Virus record (IMG/VR): IMGVR_UViG_3300032562_000004
Coordinates: 1-64,000 of that record
Reading direction: 5' to 3' (one strand)
DNA: 64,000 nucleotides
The position numbers were made by a program, and so were the translations under genes. Under the pieces are notes generated by a model that was given only the letters and a program-made list of their open reading frames with translations, made no database searches and was not told the origin of the DNA. Positions within the stretch are counted from its first letter, which is position 1; every line of letters starts with the position of its first letter. This document shows positions 3,952 to 54,782 of the stretch, piece after piece.

Positions 3952-4130
3952 TATTCAGCCTCTGCAAAATTACAATAAACTTCTTTATAAATTGTTTTGA
4001 TAGTATCATTAGGATAATTATCTCCACAATATTCTTTAACTTCTTCAACATCAAAGAATTGCACATGAATGGTTCTGCCGGATTCAAACTCGACCATATA
4101 AACACTTTCATAATCTGAATCGTAACTCAT
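3951..4130 (-). CDS. hypothetical protein (59 aa, below track cutoff)
   Basis: MSYDSDYESVYMVEFESGRTIHVQFF... read by hand; fills the gap exactly. Confidence 0.6.
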   Translation of the reverse strand: MSYDSDYESVYMVEFESGRTIHVQFFDVEEVKEYCGDNYPNDTIKTIYKEVYCNFAEAE

Positions 4131-45524: not shown

Positions 45525-46634
45525 TTATCTGATGATTTGAATGTCTTTGCCTGAAGTCCAGATTTCTAATTCATTTCTCAATCGACCATCCAACTTGAGT
45601 GATTCATAACGATTGGTTGCTTTTTGCTTCCACCATGAAATGATGTTACTCAATTCATGTTTCTCATAGTTTTCACCAGGTAAAAGTTCATCAGTCTTAC
45701 AGTTCATGTAATCCACAGCATTCTTAAATCCATAATCTGAAGTATAATATCTTTTCTTTTCGGTCAACTTTTTAGCGTTCTCAATCGTTAAAGAGAATGC
45801 CTCTCCTTCCGCAGTACCTTTTAAAGCAGCTTTAGTAAGAGCAATAATCTTTGTAAAAGTTCTTAGTTTTCTACTGGTGGTCGATGTATCACCTGCCAAT
45901 AAATCTCCAGTAATATTTTCCACATAGTTTTTCAAATCGTGATATCGTTGACCGTGCATCATTGGTACAATATCAGATTCGGTCAGACCACGAAAACGAA
46001 TGTAAGGTTTCATACCATCATATTGTGATACTGTCTTGGTACTACCATACAAACTGGTAGTTTCAAATAGGCATAAATTCATACCATATTTTTTATTACA
46101 GATTTCTCTTACTTCATGACTGGTACAGATGGCAGATAGAAGTTTACCACCTAGATAATTATAACCAAAAGGTTGAGCTGGTACAATTACGAATCCCATT
46201 ACAGTAGAAGCATTGAATCTTTTTGCAGTATCTTCCTGTTGAATCCAGACCTGTCCTAAGAGTTCATTACGAGGTTTCATATAGATGACTGGTGAACCTA
46301 ACCGAATGAAACCTAGAACCTTTCCTGACTTCTTTTCCATAACCGCCAACTGAATATTTTTACCAACTGGTGATTTATTAATATGAGAACTGGTAATGGC
46401 AAGTAATGTTTCCCAAGTGGTACCATCAATCTCACAAACATCAATTTCCATATCATTTGGGTGCATAGAGAAATCAGAGAACAAATCGTCCTCTGGTGGA
46501 AACAATGAAGAAGGTAAATTTTCAAGGTTCTTTAATTTCTCATCACGCATGTATTCTTCGGTACTTCCAATATTACTGAAATAATCATCGAATACTTTAG
46601 AGCAATGTAAGGCTTGTTCTCTAGTTAGAATCAT
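45525..46634 (-). CDS. DUF4338 / DruA-like protein
   Basis: GFIRLGSP..PRN; GFVIVPAQPFGYNYLGGKLL; FETTSLYG..SQYD. Confidence 0.65.
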   Translation of the reverse strand: MILTREQALHCSKVFDDYFSNIGSTEEYMRDEKLKNLENLPSSLFPPEDDLFSDFSMHPNDMEIDVCEIDGTTWETLLAITSSHINKSPVGKNIQLAVMEKKSGKVLGFIRLGSPVIYMKPRNELLGQVWIQQEDTAKRFNASTVMGFVIVPAQPFGYNYLGGKLLSAICTSHEVREICNKKYGMNLCLFETTSLYGSTKTVSQYDGMKPYIRFRGLTESDIVPMMHGQRYHDLKNYVENITGDLLAGDTSTTSRKLRTFTKIIALTKAALKGTAEGEAFSLTIENAKKLTEKKRYYTSDYGFKNAVDYMNCKTDELLPGENYEKHELSNIISWWKQKATNRYESLKLDGRLRNELEIWTSGKDIQIIR

Positions 46635-48010
46635 ACTTTAAAGCCTTCAAATTTCTTATGTTGAATTTTGTTTTGTGAACCAATCGCTGGTTGTCCTGAA
46701 TCAGCCAAGCCGACTTGTGCTGATTGTTCAATATCATATAATCTCATTTTGGATCGGTCAACACCAATTGTAAATCGTTTGTAATATGTTGGGTCATTAT
46801 ATCGATTCTTTAATTGTTTTACCATAATTTGACCAAGTTCTTCTAAATCTTCACTTGTGATTAAAGCAAACATCAAGTCTGCTGTGGCGGGAAGTCCGAA
46901 CGATTCACTCGTATCTTCAAGTCCTGGATCACTCGATGTAAATCCGGATCTTGTAGTCTGTGTCGCAGATACAATAGGAACATTATACTCAACAGCCAGA
47001 CCCCTAAGCTCCTCTGCAATAGACTTAACGTATGTGTAGGAATTAATATTCGCACCAGCCTTAATACGAGAGCTACAACAGATGTTAAGATAATCAACAA
47101 AGATAATATCAGGTACAAAAGACCTTTTGAGATTAAGTTCATTTAATAATGTCCTAAAGTGAGTAGTAGACGCTGAAGCAGTTGGATATTCTTTGATGAT
47201 GAGTTTACCAGTTACTTTTTCTTTAACTTTGGCAACCTTCTTATCATACATATCTTTTGGTAAGTCCATCAAATCATCAAGTGTAACATTCAATAAGTTT
47301 GCATCTATTCTTTCTGCAATTTTTTCTTCAGCCATTTCCATAGTGATGTACAAAGCATTTTTGCCTTGGACCATAGCTGCCGCTGCAACATGGCACATGA
47401 ACAAAGATTTGCCAACACCTGTACCAGCAAGAGCAATATTGAGAGTTTTAGTTGGAAGACCACCTTTTGTAATCTTGTTGAAGTATTCGAGGTCAAAAGG
47501 AATTCGCTCCTCTTTTCTATGATAGAAATCATAGCGAGCATCAGAGTTTTCAAGATAATCATGTCCTACGGTTGTATCGAATGAAACGGCCAAGGCGGCC
47601 GATAATATAGAGGGAATCGCACCTTTGTCGTGACCTTTGTCCTTACCATCGAGAATTGAAATAGCCCGTAATACGCCATTGTAAATCGCTTTCTCCTGGC
47701 AAAACTTTTCGGTCTTATCAACAAGCCATTGAATCTCGGTTTCTGATGTACGATTAGATTTAATTTCTTCGAGATATGATTCGCATCCCTTAACTTCATC
47801 ATCTGTAATAGTGGTCTTTTCTTTGACGGCAATACTAAGTGCTTCAACCGTTGGTGGAGTATTGTAAGTCTCCGTGAATGATGTAATTTCATCGAATAAT
47901 GTCCTCTCCGTTCTGTCGGAGAAATAGTCAGATTTTAAAAATGGTAATACTTTTCTTAAATAGTCCTCGTTATAGACTAGGTTTTTTAATATGGCTTGCT
48001 CTAATTTCAT
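46631..48010 (-). CDS. gp41: replicative helicase (T4 gp41)
   Basis: LAGTGVGKS; ITMEMAE; VDYLNI; SATQTTR; SESFGLPATAD; KNRY. Confidence 0.96.
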   Translation of the reverse strand: MKLEQAILKNLVYNEDYLRKVLPFLKSDYFSDRTERTLFDEITSFTETYNTPPTVEALSIAVKEKTTITDDEVKGCESYLEEIKSNRTSETEIQWLVDKTEKFCQEKAIYNGVLRAISILDGKDKGHDKGAIPSILSAALAVSFDTTVGHDYLENSDARYDFYHRKEERIPFDLEYFNKITKGGLPTKTLNIALAGTGVGKSLFMCHVAAAAMVQGKNALYITMEMAEEKIAERIDANLLNVTLDDLMDLPKDMYDKKVAKVKEKVTGKLIIKEYPTASASTTHFRTLLNELNLKRSFVPDIIFVDYLNICCSSRIKAGANINSYTYVKSIAEELRGLAVEYNVPIVSATQTTRSGFTSSDPGLEDTSESFGLPATADLMFALITSEDLEELGQIMVKQLKNRYNDPTYYKRFTIGVDRSKMRLYDIEQSAQVGLADSGQPAIGSQNKIQHKKFEGFKV

Positions 48011-48020
48011 ATCTTTCCAT

Positions 48021-48067
48021 TATAAATAAAGGTGTAGGTCACGGTACTGGAATACCCACCTACTCTA
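48021..48067 (+). promoter_or_regulatory. late promoter plus conserved stem-loop upstream of GIY-YIG gene
   Basis: TATAAATA-AAGGT-GTAGGT-CAC-GGTA-ctggaa-TACC-C-ACCTAC-TCT. Confidence 0.8.
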
Positions 48068-48099
48068 TGTCATAACAGTTTAACATAAGGACACAGCTC

Positions 48100-48747
48100 A
48101 TGTCAAGTATATATTCAATCTATAAAGCCACAAATACCATTAATGGTAAAGTTTATATTGGCTTTGATTCCAAATGGCCAAAAAGGCAAATAGTCCATAA
48201 ATCCAACCATAAAAAGGTTAATTATAAATTCTATAATGCCATTCGCAAATATGGTTGGGATAATTTTGAATGGACACTAATATATCAGTCAAAAGACCGA
48301 GAACATACCTTAAAAATAATGGAACCACATTTTATTCAAGAATATGATACTTTTGTTAATGGATACAATTCAACTCTTGGAGGTGAAGGTGTTTTTGGTT
48401 TGACCAGAAAACAGTCTGATGAAGAAAAGAAACAACGAAGCATTATAATGAAAGGTAATCAATTAGGTAAAGCACTTAAAGGTAAATTGCTTAGTGAAGA
48501 AAGAAAACAATTGTTAAGAAAACCTAGAATTAATCCTGTTTCACCTTTAACTGAAGAACACAAACAAAATATATCAAAATCTAAAATTGGAAAACCAAAA
48601 CAAAAAATTAAATGTCCTCATTGTAGTAAAATGGGTGGCTTACCACAAATGAAACAATGGCACTTTGATAATTGTAAACTTATCCTTCAATCTTGTAGGA
48701 CACATCATGACATTCCGGACAAACTACTGTTCGTTTTGGGGGAATAG
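48100..48747 (+). mobile_element. free-standing GIY-YIG homing endonuclease, antisense to the replication operon
   Basis: SIYKATNTINGKVYIG; GYNSTLGGEG; NUMOD3-like repeats; C-terminal CPHC...WHFDNCK. Confidence 0.88.
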
Positions 48748-48892
48748 AAGCGAGAACCATGTTAGGATTTTGATAATAAAGTTCTACTTTACATTTATTA
48801 CATAAAACTCCAGCCATTACTTTGCCTGTTCCGAAACCATAAGTGTCAGGCCGAAAAATGGATTCATTATATTCAGTTAATGTTTTCATCAA
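48680..48892 (-). CDS. small zinc-finger protein
   Basis: CNKC...CPEC. Confidence 0.65.
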   Translation of the reverse strand: MMKTLTEYNESIFRPDTYGFGTGKVMAGVLCNKCKVELYYQNPNMVLASIPPKRTVVCPECHDVSYKIEG

Positions 48893-49169
48893 TTATTTCC
48901 TGCTCAATGTTAGATGACATAAGCTCAACGAGCAAGTCACCAATGTAATTTTTAAATTTATCATCTTTTTCCATCTTCTTTGGCTTCATGACTGGTGATT
49001 CTATCACATCATAAGCAAAAAGTAAATACATCAAACCATCTTTTTCTTCAAACTTAACTTTACCATATTTGAAGATAGTGTCCTTATAAGGACCATCTAA
49101 TAGTTTGATATGTACCGCAGTGCCATCATCTTTTGGATAAATGAAACAGTAATCAATACCTTCAATCAT
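48873..49169 (-). CDS. conserved T4-like protein (positional gp40 equivalent)
   Basis: between uvsX and gp41; YKYGKV motif; FKNYIGDLLV. Confidence 0.7.
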   Translation of the reverse strand: MIEGIDYCFIYPKDDGTAVHIKLLDGPYKDTIFKYGKVKFEEKDGLMYLLFAYDVIESPVMKPKKMEKDDKFKNYIGDLLVELMSSNIEQEIIDENIN

Positions 49170-50238
49170 CTTCTACTCCGTTAGTAGTCTCCACTTCAAA
49201 CACTTCTTCAAAATCTTCTTGCATAATACTACCTGAAGCAATTTGATAAGTATTTTGTACATATTCTTGAAAAGACTTTTGTTTTAGAATTGGTAACCAG
49301 AAATCGGAAGTATCGGTTTCTTTAATGCGATATTTCTTATCTTCTATAACGCCGTCTGAATCCACCTTAGAGTACCAACCGTTGGATGGTTTAACAACAT
49401 GGCCTGAATCAATCGCAATATCAAGTAAGCCAGACCACTTGCTAATGCCACCATCGTGACGAACTGTAACAGGAATTTTAGACTTTTCTCTAACATATCT
49501 ACTCTTTTCTACATTGATAATGAAGTTGTAACCGACAACCTCAGTACCTTCTTTTTCTTGTTGGCGGCCAATAACAAAAATGTTATCAGCTGAATAATAT
49601 GAACCTGTACCACCACCAACGATTGCTTTAGGGAACATTCCAATTTCCATGTAAGTGTGATTAACTACAATCATTGGAATATCTTTGATTGAAAGATGAG
49701 GTGTAACCATTCTGAATAATGATTTAACAGATTTAGCTCTGGTCATATCAGCAACAGTTTTACCATCTAAGGCATCATTGACTTCTTTGATAGAGGCCAA
49801 GTTACCAATTGAATCAACAACAATAATTAACCTATCACCACGTTCAACAACACTTAATTGTTGCATAATATCGGATTTTAATTGCTCAATATCAGTAAGA
49901 GGGGTGTGAAGAACACGATTAGTATCAATACCAAAGGAATCAAAATAGGATTGCGGCGTTCCAAACTCCGAATCATAGAATAGTAAGGCTGCATCAGGAT
50001 ATTTGTCCAAGTAAGATTTTGCCATCAACAAAGAGAAGGCAGTTTTAAAATGTTTAGAAGGACCTGCCCACATAGTAAGACCGGGAGTTAAACCACCATC
50101 CAAACGACCAGAAAGTGCCACATTGATAATTGGCACCGATGTTGGAATCATATCTTTATCTGTAAAGAATTTTGATTTGGATAGAATAGCTGAATCTTTA
50201 ATACTACTGTTCTTTTTAATTTTATCAAGAATACTCAT
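49162..50238 (-). CDS. uvsX: RecA-like recombinase UvsX
   Basis: AGPSKHFKT; FYDSEFG; VDSIGNL; MTRAK; NHTY; GGTGSYYSAD. Confidence 0.96.
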   Translation of the reverse strand: MSILDKIKKNSSIKDSAILSKSKFFTDKDMIPTSVPIINVALSGRLDGGLTPGLTMWAGPSKHFKTAFSLLMAKSYLDKYPDAALLFYDSEFGTPQSYFDSFGIDTNRVLHTPLTDIEQLKSDIMQQLSVVERGDRLIIVVDSIGNLASIKEVNDALDGKTVADMTRAKSVKSLFRMVTPHLSIKDIPMIVVNHTYMEIGMFPKAIVGGGTGSYYSADNIFVIGRQQEKEGTEVVGYNFIINVEKSRYVREKSKIPVTVRHDGGISKWSGLLDIAIDSGHVVKPSNGWYSKVDSDGVIEDKKYRIKETDTSDFWLPILKQKSFQEYVQNTYQIASGSIMQEDFEEVFEVETTNGVEDD

Positions 50239-51156
50239 TTATTTTCCTTTTTCACGAAACGAATATGGTGCCTCATAATCATACTTAGGCTCTAATGTTT
50301 TAGTTTTAATTCCTGCTGAAATAGGTGGCATAGTTTCACCCGAAACAGGGTCAATAATAATAGAATCTGCTGTTTTAAACTCGGTGATGTTTTCTTTTTC
50401 AACTTCAACCTTATCAGTAAATACTGGAATATCACTAGATTTTACTCCAACAATTTCATCTTTTTTAATAATCAAATCACCTGGCTGTCCAGTTTCAGGT
50501 TTTAAATTCATGGATATATTTGCTGATATCAATAATAACACAGCTAAAGGGTCAAATACAACCATAATTATCATTATTACCAATCTAACCGCTTTATCAA
50601 TACCATCTTCTGTATTACCATAAATCAATTGTGCCACATATTTTATCGGTCCAACATCGGCAGATAATTTAATATCTTCTTTCATTAATGGTAATTTTTT
50701 CTTGCTAATTTCGGTAAGGTCTTTTTGCGTATCTTGAATTTGCTTATCTAACTTACCACTTGCTGTAGATGGATCTTTGGCACGAGCCAACAAATAATCT
50801 AATCGTTCTTTGGTAATCTTTTCTTGCTGATTTATTGTTTTTAATTCAACAGTATTGGCACCAGAGTTAAGTGTGGAATCGATATGTGCTTTAGATAGAA
50901 AACCAAAAATGCCCATCGAGGTGATGAGCATGAGTAATACCACAGCAGCGGTCAAATATGATTTTATTAAAATTGGTGCTATCTTCCAATTACGATATAA
51001 CCAAGATGCTGTTACCAGTTTACTAACTTCTAATACTGAACCCATAAACACAACTGGCCAAAAAGCACCAACGAAAATGGCAGCTAATCCAATAATTGAA
51101 TAATAGGCTGCAATACCGGACAATGATATTGCGGTTAGAAATGTAATGTAAATCAT
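50239..51156 (-). CDS. conserved membrane protein
   Basis: several N-terminal TMs, coiled coil, VFDPLAV TM. Confidence 0.8.
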   Translation of the reverse strand: MIYITFLTAISLSGIAAYYSIIGLAAIFVGAFWPVVFMGSVLEVSKLVTASWLYRNWKIAPILIKSYLTAAVVLLMLITSMGIFGFLSKAHIDSTLNSGANTVELKTINQQEKITKERLDYLLARAKDPSTASGKLDKQIQDTQKDLTEISKKKLPLMKEDIKLSADVGPIKYVAQLIYGNTEDGIDKAVRLVIMIIMVVFDPLAVLLLISANISMNLKPETGQPGDLIIKKDEIVGVKSSDIPVFTDKVEVEKENITEFKTADSIIIDPVSGETMPPISAGIKTKTLEPKYDYEAPYSFREKGK

Positions 51157-51159
51157 GAG

Positions 51160-51299
51160 AAGAAGTCCTAAATTTTATAAATAGTATATATAATGTTCAT
51201 AAAAAGGTAAAAGTAATGTATTGTGGAATATTAGCTATGAAAACCAACATTACACGATGGCACAATACCAATTGTAAATTAGCTAAAGAAGTCCTCTAG
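51160..51299 (+). pseudogene. miniature remnant of a homing-endonuclease cassette at the gp43 3' end
   Basis: TATAAATA at 51176; frame encodes KVKVMYCG...RWHNTNCK; flanked by direct repeat AAGAAGTCCT (51160, 51286). Confidence 0.7.
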
Positions 51300-53816
51300 T
51301 GTGCTAGTTTTTTCGGTTGTCCATTTCATACATTCCAGAATTACTTTGATTGGTTCCAAGAATGCCTTTTCAAATTGTACATCATAATCAATAAATTTTT
51401 CAAGTCCAAACTCTTTTGGCAATCTACCTGGGAAAGAGATAACAGTATCTTTAAATGGATTTGGCATTTTTAGATAACTATATTTCAACTTTTCACCTTC
51501 TTGAATCAATGGATACTTCTTAGTAAGGTTCATCTGTTTTAAATAATGATTATATAGAATGGCACCTTTAACGTGCATTGGTGTTCCTAATTTATATAAT
51601 TGTAATGAATCTGCATACTTACTTAGTCCATTACATCCACGAGGTGAGGAGATTTCTTCCACAGGCAAATTCATAAAATCTTCTTTAGCTTTCTTGATAA
51701 AATTATGAATATCATTTTCAGTACCATTCATCATGATAGTGATTGCTTCTTTCATCTTCTCACGAATTGCAGCAGGTGTGGAAGATTTAATCATCTCTAG
51801 ACCCATCACTTTCATCTGTGGTTCATTATACTGAACGCCTTCATTATTATATACATTTAGAATATAACGCTTCTTGGCAGTCCAGATACCTTTATCAGAA
51901 AGACCTTCACGTTTCATTTGCATCTTTTGGTCGTATGCGTGAACATAATCGGCCAACTCTTTATAAGAAGCATCAATGTAAGGTTCAATCTTATCTTTAC
52001 AGATTTTATCCATCAAAGAGATTACTTTTTGTTTGTCTGAAGTATCTTTAATAAATTTATTAACCAATTCTCCCATTCGCAGGTAAATTGAATCAGTATC
52101 AGAAGCAATAACATAATCAACATCTTTGGTCTCCAGTATTTTGTTCATCCATTGGTTAATCTTGCCTTCAATCCAACGAATACTTAATTGCCCAGCAGTA
52201 GTGACCCCAAGTGCCATCCTAAGGTCATAGAACCTAAAATACTGAGAACCCAAAGCACCATAAGCACTATTGAGAGATACTTTTTTGGCGAGTTGTATGT
52301 TGTTGTATTTGGCAATTCGTTTTTCGATTTCATATTTTTTTGATTCTTCTTGTTCATGTTCATATTCCTGTTTTGCTTTCAACATCAACTTCTTAAACTT
52401 ACTTCTATCAGTATACATTTCTTCCATCACCTTAGGTAAGAAACCTTGATGGTCGGTACGAAAGAATTGACCGTTGGGAGTTATTGTTGCACCTTTGAGT
52501 TTAGATGTGTCTACCGATTTGCTCAATAGTTTATCAACAGAAACACCATTAGAAAGAATCTCACGCATTTCATCTGTATAGTTTTCTGGTTCAATCAATG
52601 TTTCAGGACTTATATTGAATTGCATCATAAGGTGAGGGTAAAGTGAATTTAGGTCAAAGCTGGCGACATAATGGTGCATACCCACTTGAACCTCTTTAAC
52701 ATATGCACCTTCAAACATACCATCTTTTTCTTTGATGATACGAGGCGGAACAATGATACCTTTTTCAAATAAATAAGAATTGGTCAAAGAATCCCACATA
52801 CGAGTTTGAGCAAAAATATCTTCAAAGTTTGTTTTGGTATCATATGCCAAGGTTACTCCTAATTCAAGTAACTTTAACTTATCTTCCAGTTTAATAATCA
52901 ACTCAACGTCTTTGATGTTATACTCAATAAACTTCTGATAGTTCAAACGATACAATGAGTGTAGATTATCATATTCATCATACGAAATCTTGCCTTCACC
53001 GAGTTCAACTTGAGCAATGGCATCCAAACGATAGGACTCTTGTGACTTACCGCCAGGAGCATACCATTTGTATAGTTCGATATAATCAAGTGATTCGACA
53101 CCCATAATATTATAGGCAATCATAGGTCGACCATTGATAACAGTCTTACGTTCACCAATATAATTCCATGGTGATAACTTCTTGGTCAAATCTTCACCAA
53201 GAATTTTACGGAAACGATTGATAATATAAGGTTCATCAAAGAACTTGGTGTTCCAACCAGTTAGAATGTCTGGTGTCTTTTCTGTCCACAAAGACAAAAA
53301 CTGTTTACATAAAGAATATTCATCTTTACATTTTACATATATTTCAGAACCTTGCTTTTCATAATCACCACAACCAAACACATAGATTGGTCCATTTAGA
53401 TATTTGATAGCAATGGCAGTAATTGGTTCATTTGCTTGATATGGATCAGGGAATCCATTCTCGGAACCAACCTCGATATCGACTACACCGATTAGGACTT
53501 TATCAAAATCATAATCAACCATACCTTTGTGTTGGTCGGCAATAAAAGCATATTCAAAACGAGTTTGACCATAGATTTTAGGTCCACCAGATACATCTTC
53601 AAACTGTTTGATGTATTCTTTGGCGGACCTCATATCTGTAAAGATTTTCTGGTCTAGATAATTACCTTCGAGTGAGGTAAAGTTGGTGACTCTCTTTGAT
53701 GGTATAAAAAGTGAAGGAGAGTATTCCACTCTCTGTTTCACTCTCTTACCATTTAGAATACCTCGGTAAAGTATGTTATTACCAAAAGACTGAACATTTG
53801 TATAAAAATTACTCAA
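51279..53816 (-). CDS. gp43: DNA polymerase family B (T4 gp43)
   Basis: DIE exonuclease motif; SFDLNSLYPH; KVSLNSAYG; SDTDS; KKRY; probable TTG start. Confidence 0.97.
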   Translation of the reverse strand: MSNFYTNVQSFGNNILYRGILNGKRVKQRVEYSPSLFIPSKRVTNFTSLEGNYLDQKIFTDMRSAKEYIKQFEDVSGGPKIYGQTRFEYAFIADQHKGMVDYDFDKVLIGVVDIEVGSENGFPDPYQANEPITAIAIKYLNGPIYVFGCGDYEKQGSEIYVKCKDEYSLCKQFLSLWTEKTPDILTGWNTKFFDEPYIINRFRKILGEDLTKKLSPWNYIGERKTVINGRPMIAYNIMGVESLDYIELYKWYAPGGKSQESYRLDAIAQVELGEGKISYDEYDNLHSLYRLNYQKFIEYNIKDVELIIKLEDKLKLLELGVTLAYDTKTNFEDIFAQTRMWDSLTNSYLFEKGIIVPPRIIKEKDGMFEGAYVKEVQVGMHHYVASFDLNSLYPHLMMQFNISPETLIEPENYTDEMREILSNGVSVDKLLSKSVDTSKLKGATITPNGQFFRTDHQGFLPKVMEEMYTDRSKFKKLMLKAKQEYEHEQEESKKYEIEKRIAKYNNIQLAKKVSLNSAYGALGSQYFRFYDLRMALGVTTAGQLSIRWIEGKINQWMNKILETKDVDYVIASDTDSIYLRMGELVNKFIKDTSDKQKVISLMDKICKDKIEPYIDASYKELADYVHAYDQKMQMKREGLSDKGIWTAKKRYILNVYNNEGVQYNEPQMKVMGLEMIKSSTPAAIREKMKEAITIMMNGTENDIHNFIKKAKEDFMNLPVEEISSPRGCNGLSKYADSLQLYKLGTPMHVKGAILYNHYLKQMNLTKKYPLIQEGEKLKYSYLKMPNPFKDTVISFPGRLPKEFGLEKFIDYDVQFEKAFLEPIKVILECMKWTTEKTSTLEDFFS

Positions 53817-53817
53817 T

Positions 53818-54129
53818 TTAACCTGTAATGATTTTTGGGGTTGGAGGAACAATCAAACCAGCACCAAAGAGTTGCTCATAGTGTTTGGTGAACTCTTCCG
53901 CTGGTGTATAGGAGTATACTACATTCCGCTTAGAAATTACAAGCGTGGCACCAGAAACTTGTTCGGCATGAATAGGAAATGGTGAAAAACCAACGTTTGG
54001 TTGACCATCTTTACCACGAATTACTGTGATACCTACTGTATTTAGGAGTACAAATTCAGTTTCCGATTCAGATTCGATTTCGGCAACTACATCTTCTCCA
54101 GTAATTAATTTAAGACCTTTGATATTCAT
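53818..54129 (-). CDS. conserved T4-like hypothetical protein (Sm-like)
   Basis: LKLITGEDVVAEI motif; GGAG RBS. Confidence 0.75.
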   Translation of the reverse strand: MNIKGLKLITGEDVVAEIESESETEFVLLNTVGITVIRGKDGQPNVGFSPFPIHAEQVSGATLVISKRNVVYSYTPAEEFTKHYEQLFGAGLIVPPTPKIITG

Positions 54130-54219: not shown

Positions 54220-54498
54220 ATGGATTTTTTTAAGATAGTTGCCGAATTAGGATTCCCTATGGCTGCCGCTTTTGCAGCTGGGTATTTCGTATTCCTAACT
54301 CTTAAATTCATTCTGGCTGGTGTTACTGGCCAAGTCAAAAGTCTGAGCGGTATTATTACCGCCTTGGACAATCGTGTTAAAACAATGAACCATGATGTTA
54401 TCAGAATTGATACCCTAATGTCGAGCGCTATGGGTGTTAAACCTGATGTTGACCGTATTGCTCGTGCTGATGGTAAAAACGATGCTCGGAGAGATTAA
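54220..54498 (+). CDS. small single-TM protein (paralog A)
   Basis: ELGFPMAAAFAAGYFV...LDNRVKTMNHDVIRID. Confidence 0.8.
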   Translation: MDFFKIVAELGFPMAAAFAAGYFVFLTLKFILAGVTGQVKSLSGIITALDNRVKTMNHDVIRIDTLMSSAMGVKPDVDRIARADGKNDARRD

Positions 54499-54782
54499 TG
54501 GATTTAGTTGAATTAGTAAACAAATATGGTTTTCCAATTGTTGCAGCTGGCGGCATGGGTTATTTTATATATTATGTTTGGACTTGGGTAACCAAAGAAA
54601 TTAAGCCAGTTTTGAGTGAAGCAAGTACAGTATTAATTGCTTTGATTGACCGTGTTAGAATGTTAGATAATGATTTGATTAGATTGAATCAGAAAATTAA
54701 CATTGTATTAATGATGCGAGAAATTAAAGAAGATGAAAAGACTAAAAAGACTAATACTGATACTGCTAACACTTACCGTTAA
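54498..54782 (+). CDS. small single-TM protein (paralog B)
   Basis: KYGFPIVAAGGMGYFI...LIDRVRMLDNDLIRLN. Confidence 0.8.
   Translation: MDLVELVNKYGFPIVAAGGMGYFIYYVWTWVTKEIKPVLSEASTVLIALIDRVRMLDNDLIRLNQKINIVLMMREIKEDEKTKKTNTDTANTYR

What the first reader, a model, noticed from the sequence alone, without database searches (positions are those of the whole stretch)
51160..51299. ~120-bp miniature homing-endonuclease cassette that duplicated and recoded the end of gp43
Seen: gp43 ends GAC TTC TTT AGC TAA (DFFS*). About 125 nt further along the minus strand, a second copy GAC TTC TTC TCA TGA (DFFS*) overlaps the ATG of the next gene, giving a 10-bp direct repeat AAGAAGTCCT at 51160 and 51286. 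Between them, on the plus strand, lie an exact TATAAATA (51176) and a frame encoding KVKVMYCGILAMKTNITRWHNTNCK. This aligns without gaps to the last domain of the 48100 nuclease (KIKCPHCSKMGGLPQMKQWHFDNCK). Inference: an internally deleted HEG insertion that supplied a synonymously recoded gene end. It may still express a 27-aa peptide (ATG 51216, AAGGT RBS) or an antisense RNA to gp43.
Basis: partly seen in the sequence, partly recalled or inferred. Interest (0 to 1): 0.75.

Follow-up and report, generated by a model that had tools for sequence, protein, structure and literature searches.

The report
Deleted homing endonuclease remnant after gp43
The 122-base spacer after the phage DNA polymerase gene is the leftover of a selfish endonuclease gene that lost 489 bases in one deletion; it is a clear but ordinary case, because intact, empty and decayed versions of the same site all occur in related phages.

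Summary

- **Empty site:** in 40 of 72 related loci the gp43 stop overlaps the ATG of the next gene (ATGA).
- **Intact allele:** four metagenomic contigs, 97-99% identical to the window in the flanks, carry a 190-aa endonuclease gene at this site. It lies antisense to gp43 and has a GIY-YIG-like fold, a NUMOD3 motif and a zinc finger.
- **Window allele:** it equals the intact allele minus 489 nt (163 codons, in frame) between two ATTGTG repeats. All retained bases are identical. A second assembly from another sample carries the same mini allele.
- **Orthologues:** endonucleases 91%, 74% and 63% identical occupy the same junction in diverged phages. Each has a new gp43 last codon plus TAA, and a vestigial old gp43 end in front of the downstream gene.
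- **Mobility:** the four intact alleles show 0/573 differences while their flanks differ by about 3-4%.

Expression of the 27-aa peptide or of an antisense RNA is untested.

Verdict: a dead homing-endonuclease remnant, a new member of a known kind, of moderate interest.

The parts
51279..53852 (-). gp43 family B DNA polymerase (857 aa), ending LEDFFS*
   Evidence: Pfam DNA_pol_B 3e-27; phrog_262 E=0. The end was read.
51273..51295 (-). Repeat copy 1. It holds the present gp43 end (AGGACTTCTT TAGC TAA) followed by TTTACA. On the plus strand it encodes the endonuclease tail C-K-L-A-K-E-V.
   Evidence: 23-nt direct repeat, 18/23 matches. The endonuclease's last seven codons are the antisense of gp43's LEDFFS*.
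51157..51278 (.). 122-nt spacer between gp43 and the 305-aa gene: the mini cassette
   Evidence: The spacer is absent from 40 of 72 related loci (ATGA overlap). It is 611 nt in L001 and L002. It is single copy in the 235,812-nt genome.
51216..51299 (+). 27-codon remnant ORF (MYC + GILAMKTNITRWHNTNCKLAKEVL). It corresponds to residues 1-3 and 167-190 of the 190-aa endonuclease.
   Evidence: The nuclease domain, the NUMOD3 motif and one of the four zinc ligands are lost.
51220..51225 (+). ATTGTG, the deletion junction. This 6-nt microhomology is present twice, 489 nt apart, in the full-length allele.
   Evidence: The two alignments of L001 to the window meet at 51220-51232.
51176..51183 (+). TATAAATA, a T4-type late-promoter-like octamer 33 nt upstream of the remnant ATG
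   Evidence: The same octamer lies upstream of every endonuclease gene examined: L171, L175, L177, L185, L186, L165 and window 48021.
51204..51208 (+). AAGGT, a Shine-Dalgarno-like sequence 7 nt before the ATG at 51216
   Evidence: Read directly from the sequence. It is identical in the full-length allele.
51147..51169 (-). Repeat copy 2. It holds the vestigial old gp43 end (AGGACTTCTTCTCA TGA), which now serves as the AGGA ribosome-binding site (51166-51169), spacer and ATG of the 305-aa gene.
   Evidence: Its 17 nt AGGACTTCTTCTCATGA are identical in L171, although the flanking genes there are only 67-85% identical in protein.
50239..51156 (-). 305-aa predicted membrane protein gene. Its function is unknown; it is conserved between gp43 and uvsX in this phage group.
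   Evidence: No Pfam or PHROG match. 81 related stretches were found in IMG/VR and the best 80 were kept as loci.
48100..48747 (+). A second, intact GIY-YIG homing endonuclease gene. Its C-terminal zinc-finger region is homologous to the remnant. It belongs to a separate insertion.
   Evidence: phrog_314 7e-29. BLASTP 2e-9 against the full-length allele. It is absent from L003 and L161.

Best explanation
The spacer is the dead remnant of a free-standing homing endonuclease gene.

**Ancestral state (shown).** The gp43 stop overlapped the start of the next gene as ATGA.

**Insertion (shown).** A GIY-YIG-type endonuclease cassette sits at that junction, antisense to gp43, with its own TATAAATA promoter. 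It split the overlap. gp43 now ends with a new last codon and a TAA that abuts the endonuclease's Cys-Lys codons. The endonuclease reading frame runs on through the antisense of LEDFF. The old gp43 end survives as 13-17 nt that keep the AGGA ribosome-binding site and the ATG of the downstream gene.

**Spread (inferred from identity patterns).** The cassette moved recently between co-occurring phage genomes by homing.

**Deletion in the window's lineage (shown).** One 489-nt in-frame deletion between two ATTGTG repeats removed residues 4-166. That is the whole nuclease domain, the NUMOD3 motif and one of the four zinc ligands.

**Consequence (inferred).** The 27-codon remnant can no longer cut or bind DNA. 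Its two ends persist for two reasons: the deletion is very recent, and the ends now carry gp43's stop codon and the downstream gene's translation signals.
For: - **Empty sites:** 40 of 72 related loci have the ATGA overlap.
- **Full-length allele:** it is present in L001, L002, L161 and L162. Flanks are 97-99% identical to the window, and the 79 + 101 retained bases checked around the junction are identical in L001, L002 and L161.
- **Deletion size:** 611 - 122 = 489 nt = 163 codons, and 190 - 163 = 27 aa. It is bounded by ATTGTG on both sides.
- **Endonuclease identity of the 190-aa protein:**
  - phrog_314 "homing endonuclease" 1e-16 and phrog_10820 3e-24.
  - Pfam NUMOD3 28.5 bits, above the 20.4 cut-off.
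  - The family profile hits the I-TevI DNA-binding domain 1i3j at 3.9e-4.
  - In the AlphaFold model (pLDDT 82.6), residues 1-97 align to the I-TevI catalytic domain with Z 6.8 over 86 residues. The next matches are also mostly GIY-YIG domains.
  - Invariant E73 and N90 lie near the positions I recall for I-TevI's E75 and N90.
- **Same site in diverged phages:** orthologues of 91%, 74% and 63% identity occupy it, each with a new gp43 end and a vestigial old end.
- **Mobility:** four full-length alleles show 0/573 differences while adjacent 200-nt windows differ by 2-23 nt. Cassette DNA is about 93% identical between L001 and L171, against roughly 76-80% in the flanks. The endonuclease is 91.5% identical in protein, against 81% for gp43 and 85% for uvsX.
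- **Not an artefact:** the mini allele is also in L163, from a different sample and a 201,964-nt contig, 100% identical over 3181 nt.
Against: - No enzyme activity, transcript or peptide has been measured for either allele.
- The deletion is in frame and keeps promoter, ribosome-binding site, start and stop. This has a one-in-three chance by accident, but it is also what a selected mini-gene would look like.
- Pfam's GIY-YIG model does not hit the 190-aa protein, and no invariant Arg is evident. The nuclease class therefore rests on fold and partial motifs.
- Which repeat copy is native and which was brought by the cassette cannot be resolved.
- The two mini-allele assemblies have similar accession numbers, so they may come from one project and one phage population.
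Confidence: 0.88

Rival explanations
1. The mini cassette has been domesticated. Its retained late-type promoter would drive an antisense RNA across the 3' end of gp43, or the 27-aa peptide would act as a regulator or immunity factor. The vestigial target copy next to the promoter could then act as an operator, as described for I-TevI.
For: - Promoter-like TATAAATA, AAGGT, ATG and stop are all intact and the deletion is in frame.
- No terminator-like site was found on the plus strand in 50800-51700.
- I-TevI represses its own late promoter through an operator that resembles its homing site (PMC2988022).
- An independent nuclease-less allele that keeps the DNA-binding half exists at the same site (L186).
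Against: - The peptide keeps only 24 residues of the DNA-binding region and three of four zinc ligands.
- The retained bases are identical to the full-length allele, so there has been no time for selection to act.
- The mini allele was seen in only one phage population.
- Neither strand of the region folds better than shuffled sequence, with z-scores of -1.3 and +0.7, and there is no significant Rfam match; the only hit is far below its family threshold.
Confidence: 0.07
2. The short allele is an assembly artefact: a collapse between the two ATTGTG repeats of a genome that really carries the full-length gene.
For: Both alleles occur in related metagenomes. A 6-nt repeat bounds the missing segment.
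Against: - A 6-nt repeat is far too short to mislead an assembler.
- Two assemblies from different samples, contigs of 235,812 and 201,964 nt, give the same junction.
Confidence: 0.03
3. The short form is ancestral and the 489 nt were later inserted into a pre-existing small ORF. Otherwise the repeat and the peptide similarity are chance in an ordinary spacer.
For: Short direct repeats and TATAAATA are individually common in this window.
Against: - The full-length protein is homologous along its whole length to more than 100 database proteins, and its fold spans the deletion boundaries.
- Three orthologues in diverged phages are full length at the same site.
- Most relatives have no spacer at all.
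Confidence: 0.02

Closest known systems
Free-standing GIY-YIG homing endonuclease genes of T4-type phages (seg genes; "intronless homing"), reviewed in PMC2988022
   Same: - A stand-alone endonuclease gene sits between conserved phage genes and is present or absent among close relatives.
- It has a late-type promoter and overlaps neighbouring reading frames.
- It has a modular build: a nuclease domain followed by a NUMOD3 and zinc-finger DNA-binding region.
- Identity patterns indicate lateral spread.
   Different: - The host is an uncultivated phage of about 236 kb related to cyanophage-type T4-like phages.
- The gene lies antisense and convergent with gp43.
- The nuclease domain is a divergent GIY-YIG variant that Pfam's model does not detect.
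- The window holds only a 27-codon remnant.
- Cleavage has not been shown.
I-TevI (T4 td intron endonuclease; PDB 1mk0 and 1ln0 catalytic domain, 1i3j DNA-binding domain)
   Same: It is the best structural match to residues 1-97 of the full-length allele (Z 6.8). The family profile matches its DNA-binding domain at 3.9e-4. Both proteins combine a nuclease domain, a linker and a zinc finger.
   Different: I-TevI is intron-encoded, shares only 15-18% identity in the aligned part, and has a different target gene. The autorepressor-operator logic of I-TevI is only a speculative parallel here.
Mobile endonuclease ORFs (mORFs) of fungal mitochondria that bring a replacement C-terminus for the host gene (Allomyces atp6; Glomus atp6, atp9, cox2, nad3), PMC3630166
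   Same: The endonuclease gene is inserted at the 3' end of a host gene. The host gene is completed by sequence next to the insert, while the native end survives downstream as an unused vestige.
   Different: - The scale differs: here it is 10-17 nt with one changed codon plus the stop, against 50-300 nt there.
- The endonuclease is antisense, not fused in frame.
- The displaced end has a second use, as ribosome-binding site and start of the next gene.
- Foreign origin of the new end cannot be tested on so few bases.
The homing endonuclease life cycle (invasion, fixation, degeneration, loss), as proposed for yeast VDE and omega; cited from my own knowledge
   Same: Empty, intact and internally deleted states all occur at one site. 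So do a nuclease-less allele (L186) and a possible post-loss footprint: L006 and L007 have no insert, yet gp43 ends with the same AGC TAA.
   Different: The states are inferred from metagenomic contigs. There is no phylogenetic dating and no activity assay.

Membership tests
Free-standing homing endonuclease gene (phage seg/mob type) | Encodes a site-specific nuclease domain | tested here: not met
   The window allele lacks residues 4-166, including the whole nuclease domain. The window element is therefore a remnant, not a functional member. The full-length allele in L001 does have the domain.
Free-standing homing endonuclease gene (phage seg/mob type) | Present or absent at one fixed site among related genomes, outside any intron or intein | tested here: met
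   - 40 of 72 related loci are empty sites.
- Four contigs carry the near-identical full-length allele.
- Three orthologues occupy the same junction.
- No intron- or intein-like context was seen.
Free-standing homing endonuclease gene (phage seg/mob type) | Lateral mobility: the element is younger than its flanks | tested here: met
   Four haplotypes show 0/573 differences in the gene while flanking 200-nt windows differ by 2-23 nt. Cassette DNA is about 93% identical between L001 and L171, against roughly 76-80% in the flanks.
Free-standing homing endonuclease gene (phage seg/mob type) | Cleaves the insert-less allele near the insertion site | not testable with these tools
   This needs purified protein and junction substrates.
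GIY-YIG nuclease superfamily (full-length allele) | GIY and YIG strands, with catalytic Arg, Glu and Asn | tested here: inconclusive
   - The family has VYLT.Y.G and FYIGS, and invariant Y5, Y18, E73 and N90.
- No invariant Arg is present.
- Pfam PF01541 gives no hit at E <= 1.
GIY-YIG nuclease superfamily (full-length allele) | GIY-YIG fold | tested here: met
   The top Foldseek and VIA matches are mostly GIY-YIG domains: I-TevI Z 6.8 over 86 of 97 residues, PD-T4-3 Z 5.4, and UvrC Z 4.7. The Z values are moderate, so the support is fair rather than strong.
NUMOD3 / zinc-finger DNA-binding module | NUMOD3 motif and a CxxC...HxxxC zinc finger | tested here: not met
   The full-length allele has NUMOD3 at 28.5 bits, above the 20.4 cut-off, and the motif CAHC...H..NC. 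The window remnant has no NUMOD3 and keeps only three of the four zinc ligands.
Mitochondrial mORF-type gene-end replacement | The host gene is completed by sequence next to the insert, and the native end is left downstream | tested here: met
   Copy 1 (51273-51295) ends gp43. Copy 2 (51147-51169) is the displaced old end. The same layout occurs in L171, L175 and L177.
Mitochondrial mORF-type gene-end replacement | The inserted end is of foreign origin | not testable with these tools
   Only one codon and the stop differ, which is too short for a phylogeny.
MITE or insertion sequence with target-site duplication | Terminal inverted repeats and multiple genomic copies | tested here: not met
   No inverted repeats lie at the ends of the spacer. 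The spacer is single copy in the 235,812-nt genome.

The most novel reading that the evidence does not exclude
Nuclease-less derivatives of this endonuclease may be kept because they do something useful. The candidates are the 27-codon remnant with its late-type promoter here and the DNA-binding-only allele in L186. Possible roles are a late antisense RNA against the gp43 3' end, a promoter or operator unit built from the displaced target copy, or protection of the junction against attack by related endonucleases.
Probability: 0.06. Interest if true: 0.6.

Novelty: new member of a known kind. Interest (0 to 1): 0.35.

Why it matters
This is one small site in an uncultivated freshwater T4-like phage group. 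It shows, at base resolution, how a selfish endonuclease gene can enter an overlapping stop/start junction without harming either gene. It also shows how the gene spreads and how it dies.

Several states are available as natural sequences:
- empty sites;
- the intact gene;
- an internally deleted remnant (the window);
- a nuclease-less allele (L186);
- an allele with a swapped nuclease domain (L185);
- a possible footprint left after loss (L006, L007).

These sequences give a ready set of substrates and enzymes for testing target recognition by this endonuclease family. The site is also a practical warning for annotation: a spacer of about 120 nt with a tiny ORF next to a core gene may be a decayed mobile element.

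None of this changes current understanding of homing endonucleases.

Tried and rejected
- **GenBank phages:** a DNA search found only distant cyanophage polymerase matches at 64-67% identity and no information on the spacer.
- **Deletion junction in IMG/VR:** an exact search found nothing. The predicted empty allele of the window's own lineage was also not found.
- **Footprint end AGCTAATG:** of seven IMG/VR hits only two (L179, L184, the contigs of L006 and L007) are gp43 ends. The other five are chance matches.
- **Protein families:** Pfam and PHROGs on the 27-aa peptide gave nothing. phmmer of the 190-aa protein against PDB sequences gave nothing. Only the family profile reached I-TevI.
- **RNA:** the only Rfam match is far below its family threshold, and neither strand of the spacer folds better than shuffled sequence.
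- **Signals:** no terminator was found in the spacer, and sigma-70-like promoter hits are not above chance (8 against 5.4).
- **Transposon or MITE reading:** rejected, because there are no terminal inverted repeats and the spacer is single copy.
- **Repeat statistics:** rejected as evidence on their own, because such repeats are common in the window.

Full report
**1. Setting**

The window is bases 1-64000 of a 235,812-nt viral metagenome contig. Around the finding lies a T4-type replication module on the minus strand:
- gp43 DNA polymerase, 51279..53852;
- a 305-aa predicted membrane protein of unknown function, 50239..51156;
- UvsX, 49162..50238;
- a 98-aa ORF;
- the gp41 helicase, 46631..48010.

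A GIY-YIG homing endonuclease gene lies on the plus strand at 48100..48747. The nearest named phages are cyanomyophages, at only 64-67% DNA identity in gp43. Closer relatives exist only as metagenomic contigs.

**2. The observation**

- gp43 ends LEDFFS* (…GAC TTC TTT AGC TAA).
- 126 nt further along the minus strand, GAC TTC TTC TCA TGA overlaps the ATG of the 305-aa gene.
- The shared decamer extends to an imperfect 23-nt direct repeat with 18/23 matches, at 51147-51169 and 51273-51295.
- TATAAATA, AAGGT and a 27-codon ORF (51216..51299) lie on the plus strand between the two copies.

None of this is statistically remarkable by itself. Comparable short repeats occur at about 20-90 places in the window, and TATAAATA is no more frequent than in shuffled sequence. 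The case rests on the comparison with relatives.

**3. Empty sites**

A scan of IMG/VR with the 305-aa protein gave 80 loci, of which 72 also hold the end of gp43.
- In 40 of these the gp43 stop and the downstream ATG overlap as ATGA. Typical sequences read GAG GAC TTC TTC TCA TGA (EDFFS*) or variants ending T, G or A.
- This is exactly the sequence of repeat copy 2 in the window.
- The AGGA of the GAG GAC codons sits 9 nt before the ATG, so it probably serves as the ribosome-binding site of the downstream gene. That role is an inference.

**4. The full-length allele**

Four contigs (L001, L002, L161, L162) match the window at 97-99% on both sides but have 611 nt between the two genes instead of 122. 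The extra DNA completes a 190-aa ORF on the strand opposite to gp43.
- It begins with the window's MYC and ends with the window's GILAMKTNITRWHNTNCKLAKEVL*.
- The difference is 489 nt, which is 163 codons. It is bounded in the long allele by two copies of ATTGTG, of which the window keeps one at 51220-51225.
- The 79 and 101 bases checked on either side of the junction are identical between the window and L001, L002 and L161. The deletion is therefore very recent, and it has the signature of slippage or microhomology-mediated joining.
- The short allele is also found in a 201,964-nt contig from another sample (L163, 100% identical over 3181 nt). An assembly artefact is therefore unlikely.

**5. 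What the 190-aa protein is**

- It matches PHROG families annotated as homing endonucleases. These include phrog_314, which the 48100 protein also matches.
- It has a Pfam NUMOD3 motif above threshold.
- Its last 66 residues align to the 48100 protein at E = 2e-9, including the CxHC…WHxxNCK zinc-finger motif.
- A profile of 29 family members hits the DNA-binding domain of I-TevI.
- An AlphaFold model (pLDDT 82.6, and above 90 over residues 1-90) places residues 1-97 on the I-TevI catalytic domain with Z 6.8. The next matches are also mostly GIY-YIG domains.
- Invariant E73 and N90 lie near the positions I recall for I-TevI's catalytic Glu and Asn.

Two points count against a firm class assignment: Pfam's GIY-YIG model does not hit, and no invariant Arg is seen. 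I therefore call it a divergent GIY-YIG-type homing endonuclease with fair confidence.

The deletion in the window removes the nuclease domain, the NUMOD3 motif and one of the four zinc ligands. Its first six positions (KVKVMY) are leader sequence and start codons and are not homologous.

**6. The same site in other phages**

A protein search found many relatives. Those of 91%, 74% and 63% identity were traced to their contigs. Each lies between the 305-aa gene homologue and gp43, antisense, with its 3' end overlapping gp43 and with TATAAATA upstream. In each case:
- gp43 ends with TAA directly abutting the endonuclease's Asn-Cys-Lys codons (…TAA TTT ACA ATT);
- a copy of the old gp43 end precedes the downstream ATG: AGGACTTCTTCTCATGA in L171, AGGACTTCTTTACATGA in L175, and a decayed AAGGTTTCTTCGCATGA in L177.

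The new last residue of gp43 is S in the window, absent in L171, N in L175 and V in L177. The "synonymous" recoding in the window is therefore incidental. The constant feature is that the conserved LEDFF tail of gp43 and the translation signals of the downstream gene are both preserved. From my own knowledge, the C-terminal tail of T4-family polymerases is the clamp-binding motif.

The endonuclease's last seven codons (L-x-K-E/K-V-L-stop) are simply the antisense reading of gp43's LEDFFx-stop. Which repeat copy is native and which arrived with the cassette cannot be decided. In the comparison of L001 with L171, the tract of high identity starts exactly at the downstream ATG and includes copy 2.

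**7. Evidence for mobility**

- The four full-length alleles differ at 0 of 573 positions. The adjacent 200-nt windows of the same contigs differ by 2-23 positions, about 3-4%.
- Between L001 and L171 the cassette is about 93% identical in DNA, against roughly 76-80% for the flanks.
- The endonuclease is 91.5% identical in protein, against 81% for gp43, 85% for UvsX and 67% for the 305-aa protein.

Both patterns fit recent lateral spread by homing. Activity itself is untested.

**8. Other states of the site**

- L186 has a 127-aa ORF that keeps the NUMOD3 and zinc-finger half but has no nuclease domain.
- L185 has the same C-terminal half joined to a classical GIY-YIG N-terminus. This suggests that the C-terminal half carries the site specificity.
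- L006 and L007 have no insert, yet gp43 ends TTT AGC TAA TG in a background otherwise like L004. The Ser and stop codons are the same as in the window. A deletion between the two repeat copies of an occupied allele would give exactly this junction, so it may be a footprint of loss. That is an inference.
- Four loci carry a 2OG-Fe(II) oxygenase gene at the same junction instead.

**9. Mechanism and rivals**

The best explanation is a homing endonuclease cassette that entered the stop/start overlap, spread, and in this lineage was inactivated by one microhomology deletion. Its ends remain because the event is recent and because they now hold gp43's stop and the downstream gene's ribosome-binding site.

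A domesticated role cannot be excluded, because all expression signals are intact. The candidates are a late antisense RNA, a peptide, or an operator like that of I-TevI (PMC2988022). Several results argue against such a role:
- the peptide keeps too little of the DNA-binding region;
- no structure or RNA family is detected;
- there has been no time for selection to act.

A transposon or MITE reading fails, because there are no terminal inverted repeats and the spacer is single copy.

**10. Comparison with what is known, and verdict**

The element works like the free-standing seg-type endonuclease genes of T4 (PMC2988022). In the way it completes the host gene and strands the native end, it is a miniature parallel of the mitochondrial mobile ORFs that bring a replacement C-terminus (PMC3630166).

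The window holds a dead remnant of a new member of a known kind. It is a tidy, well-documented example of the endonuclease life cycle rather than a new mechanism.

Noticed in passing
window 47963-48883: The GIY-YIG endonuclease gene at 48100-48747 (+), together with a 70-aa ORF at 48680-48892 (-), forms a 921-nt insert. It is replaced by about 42 nt in L003 and L161, where the 98-aa gene's stop overlaps the gp41 start. This is a second endonuclease insertion into a stop/start overlap, again with TATAAATA (48021) next to the downstream gene's start.
   Followed up: partly
window 48021-48099; L165 1386-1470 (own genome, about 151.9 kb); L185 about 200-271: The 5' leaders of three endonuclease genes with different nuclease domains are clearly homologous (TATAAATA…GGTGTAGGTCACG…CCTACTCTATG…ACACAGCTCATG). 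A shared leader module therefore seems to travel with these genes. Its role is unknown; it may be a regulatory hairpin.
   Followed up: no
L185 272-760: At the same gp43-end site there is an endonuclease with a classical GIY-YIG N-terminus (MDIYYVYAYL…YYIGKG) joined to the same C-terminal DNA-binding tail as the 190-aa protein. This looks like a swap of the nuclease domain.
   Followed up: partly
L186 983-1366: At the same site there is a 127-aa ORF with the NUMOD3 and zinc-finger tail but no nuclease domain. It is an independent degenerate, or DNA-binding-only, allele. An extra 93-aa gene lies between it and the 305-aa gene homologue.
   Followed up: partly
L084 1785-5116; L171 3057-5594: A related endonuclease, 46% identical, sits inside gp43 and splits it into genes of 492 and 367 aa. 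In L171-L174 gp43 is also in pieces of 430, 177, 57 and 452 aa.
   Followed up: no
L006 and L007, around position 4001: There is no insert, but gp43 ends TTT AGC TAA TG, with the same AGC TAA as the window, in a background otherwise identical to L004. It may be a footprint of cassette loss or a resistant junction.
   Followed up: partly
L017, L019, L020, L022 (for example L019 3367-3999): A 2OG-Fe(II) oxygenase gene of about 206-210 aa (PF13759, 1e-21) is inserted at the same gp43/305-aa junction. It is in sense orientation and its start overlaps the gp43 stop as ATGA.
   Followed up: partly
own genome 152034-152672 (L165 1471-2109): This is an intact 212-aa paralogue of the deleted endonuclease, 54% identical over the nuclease domain. 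It is also antisense to its neighbours, has TATAAATA upstream, and overlaps a convergent gene by 37 nt at its 3' end.
   Followed up: partly
window 54497-54500, compared with L162 5358-5653: L162 carries about 294 nt that the window lacks at this point. This is another insertion/deletion polymorphism in the same phage population.
   Followed up: no
window 52080-52280 approx.: A 200-nt patch of gp43, lying 800-1000 nt from the endonuclease stop, has 23 differences between L001 and each of the window, L002, L161 and L162, against 2-7 in neighbouring patches. It looks like a recombination mosaic.
   Followed up: no
window 45525-46634 (-): The 369-aa protein next to gp41 matches the Pfam DruA family (Druantia defence protein) at 1.2e-9 and phrog_19197 at 2e-128.
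   Followed up: no
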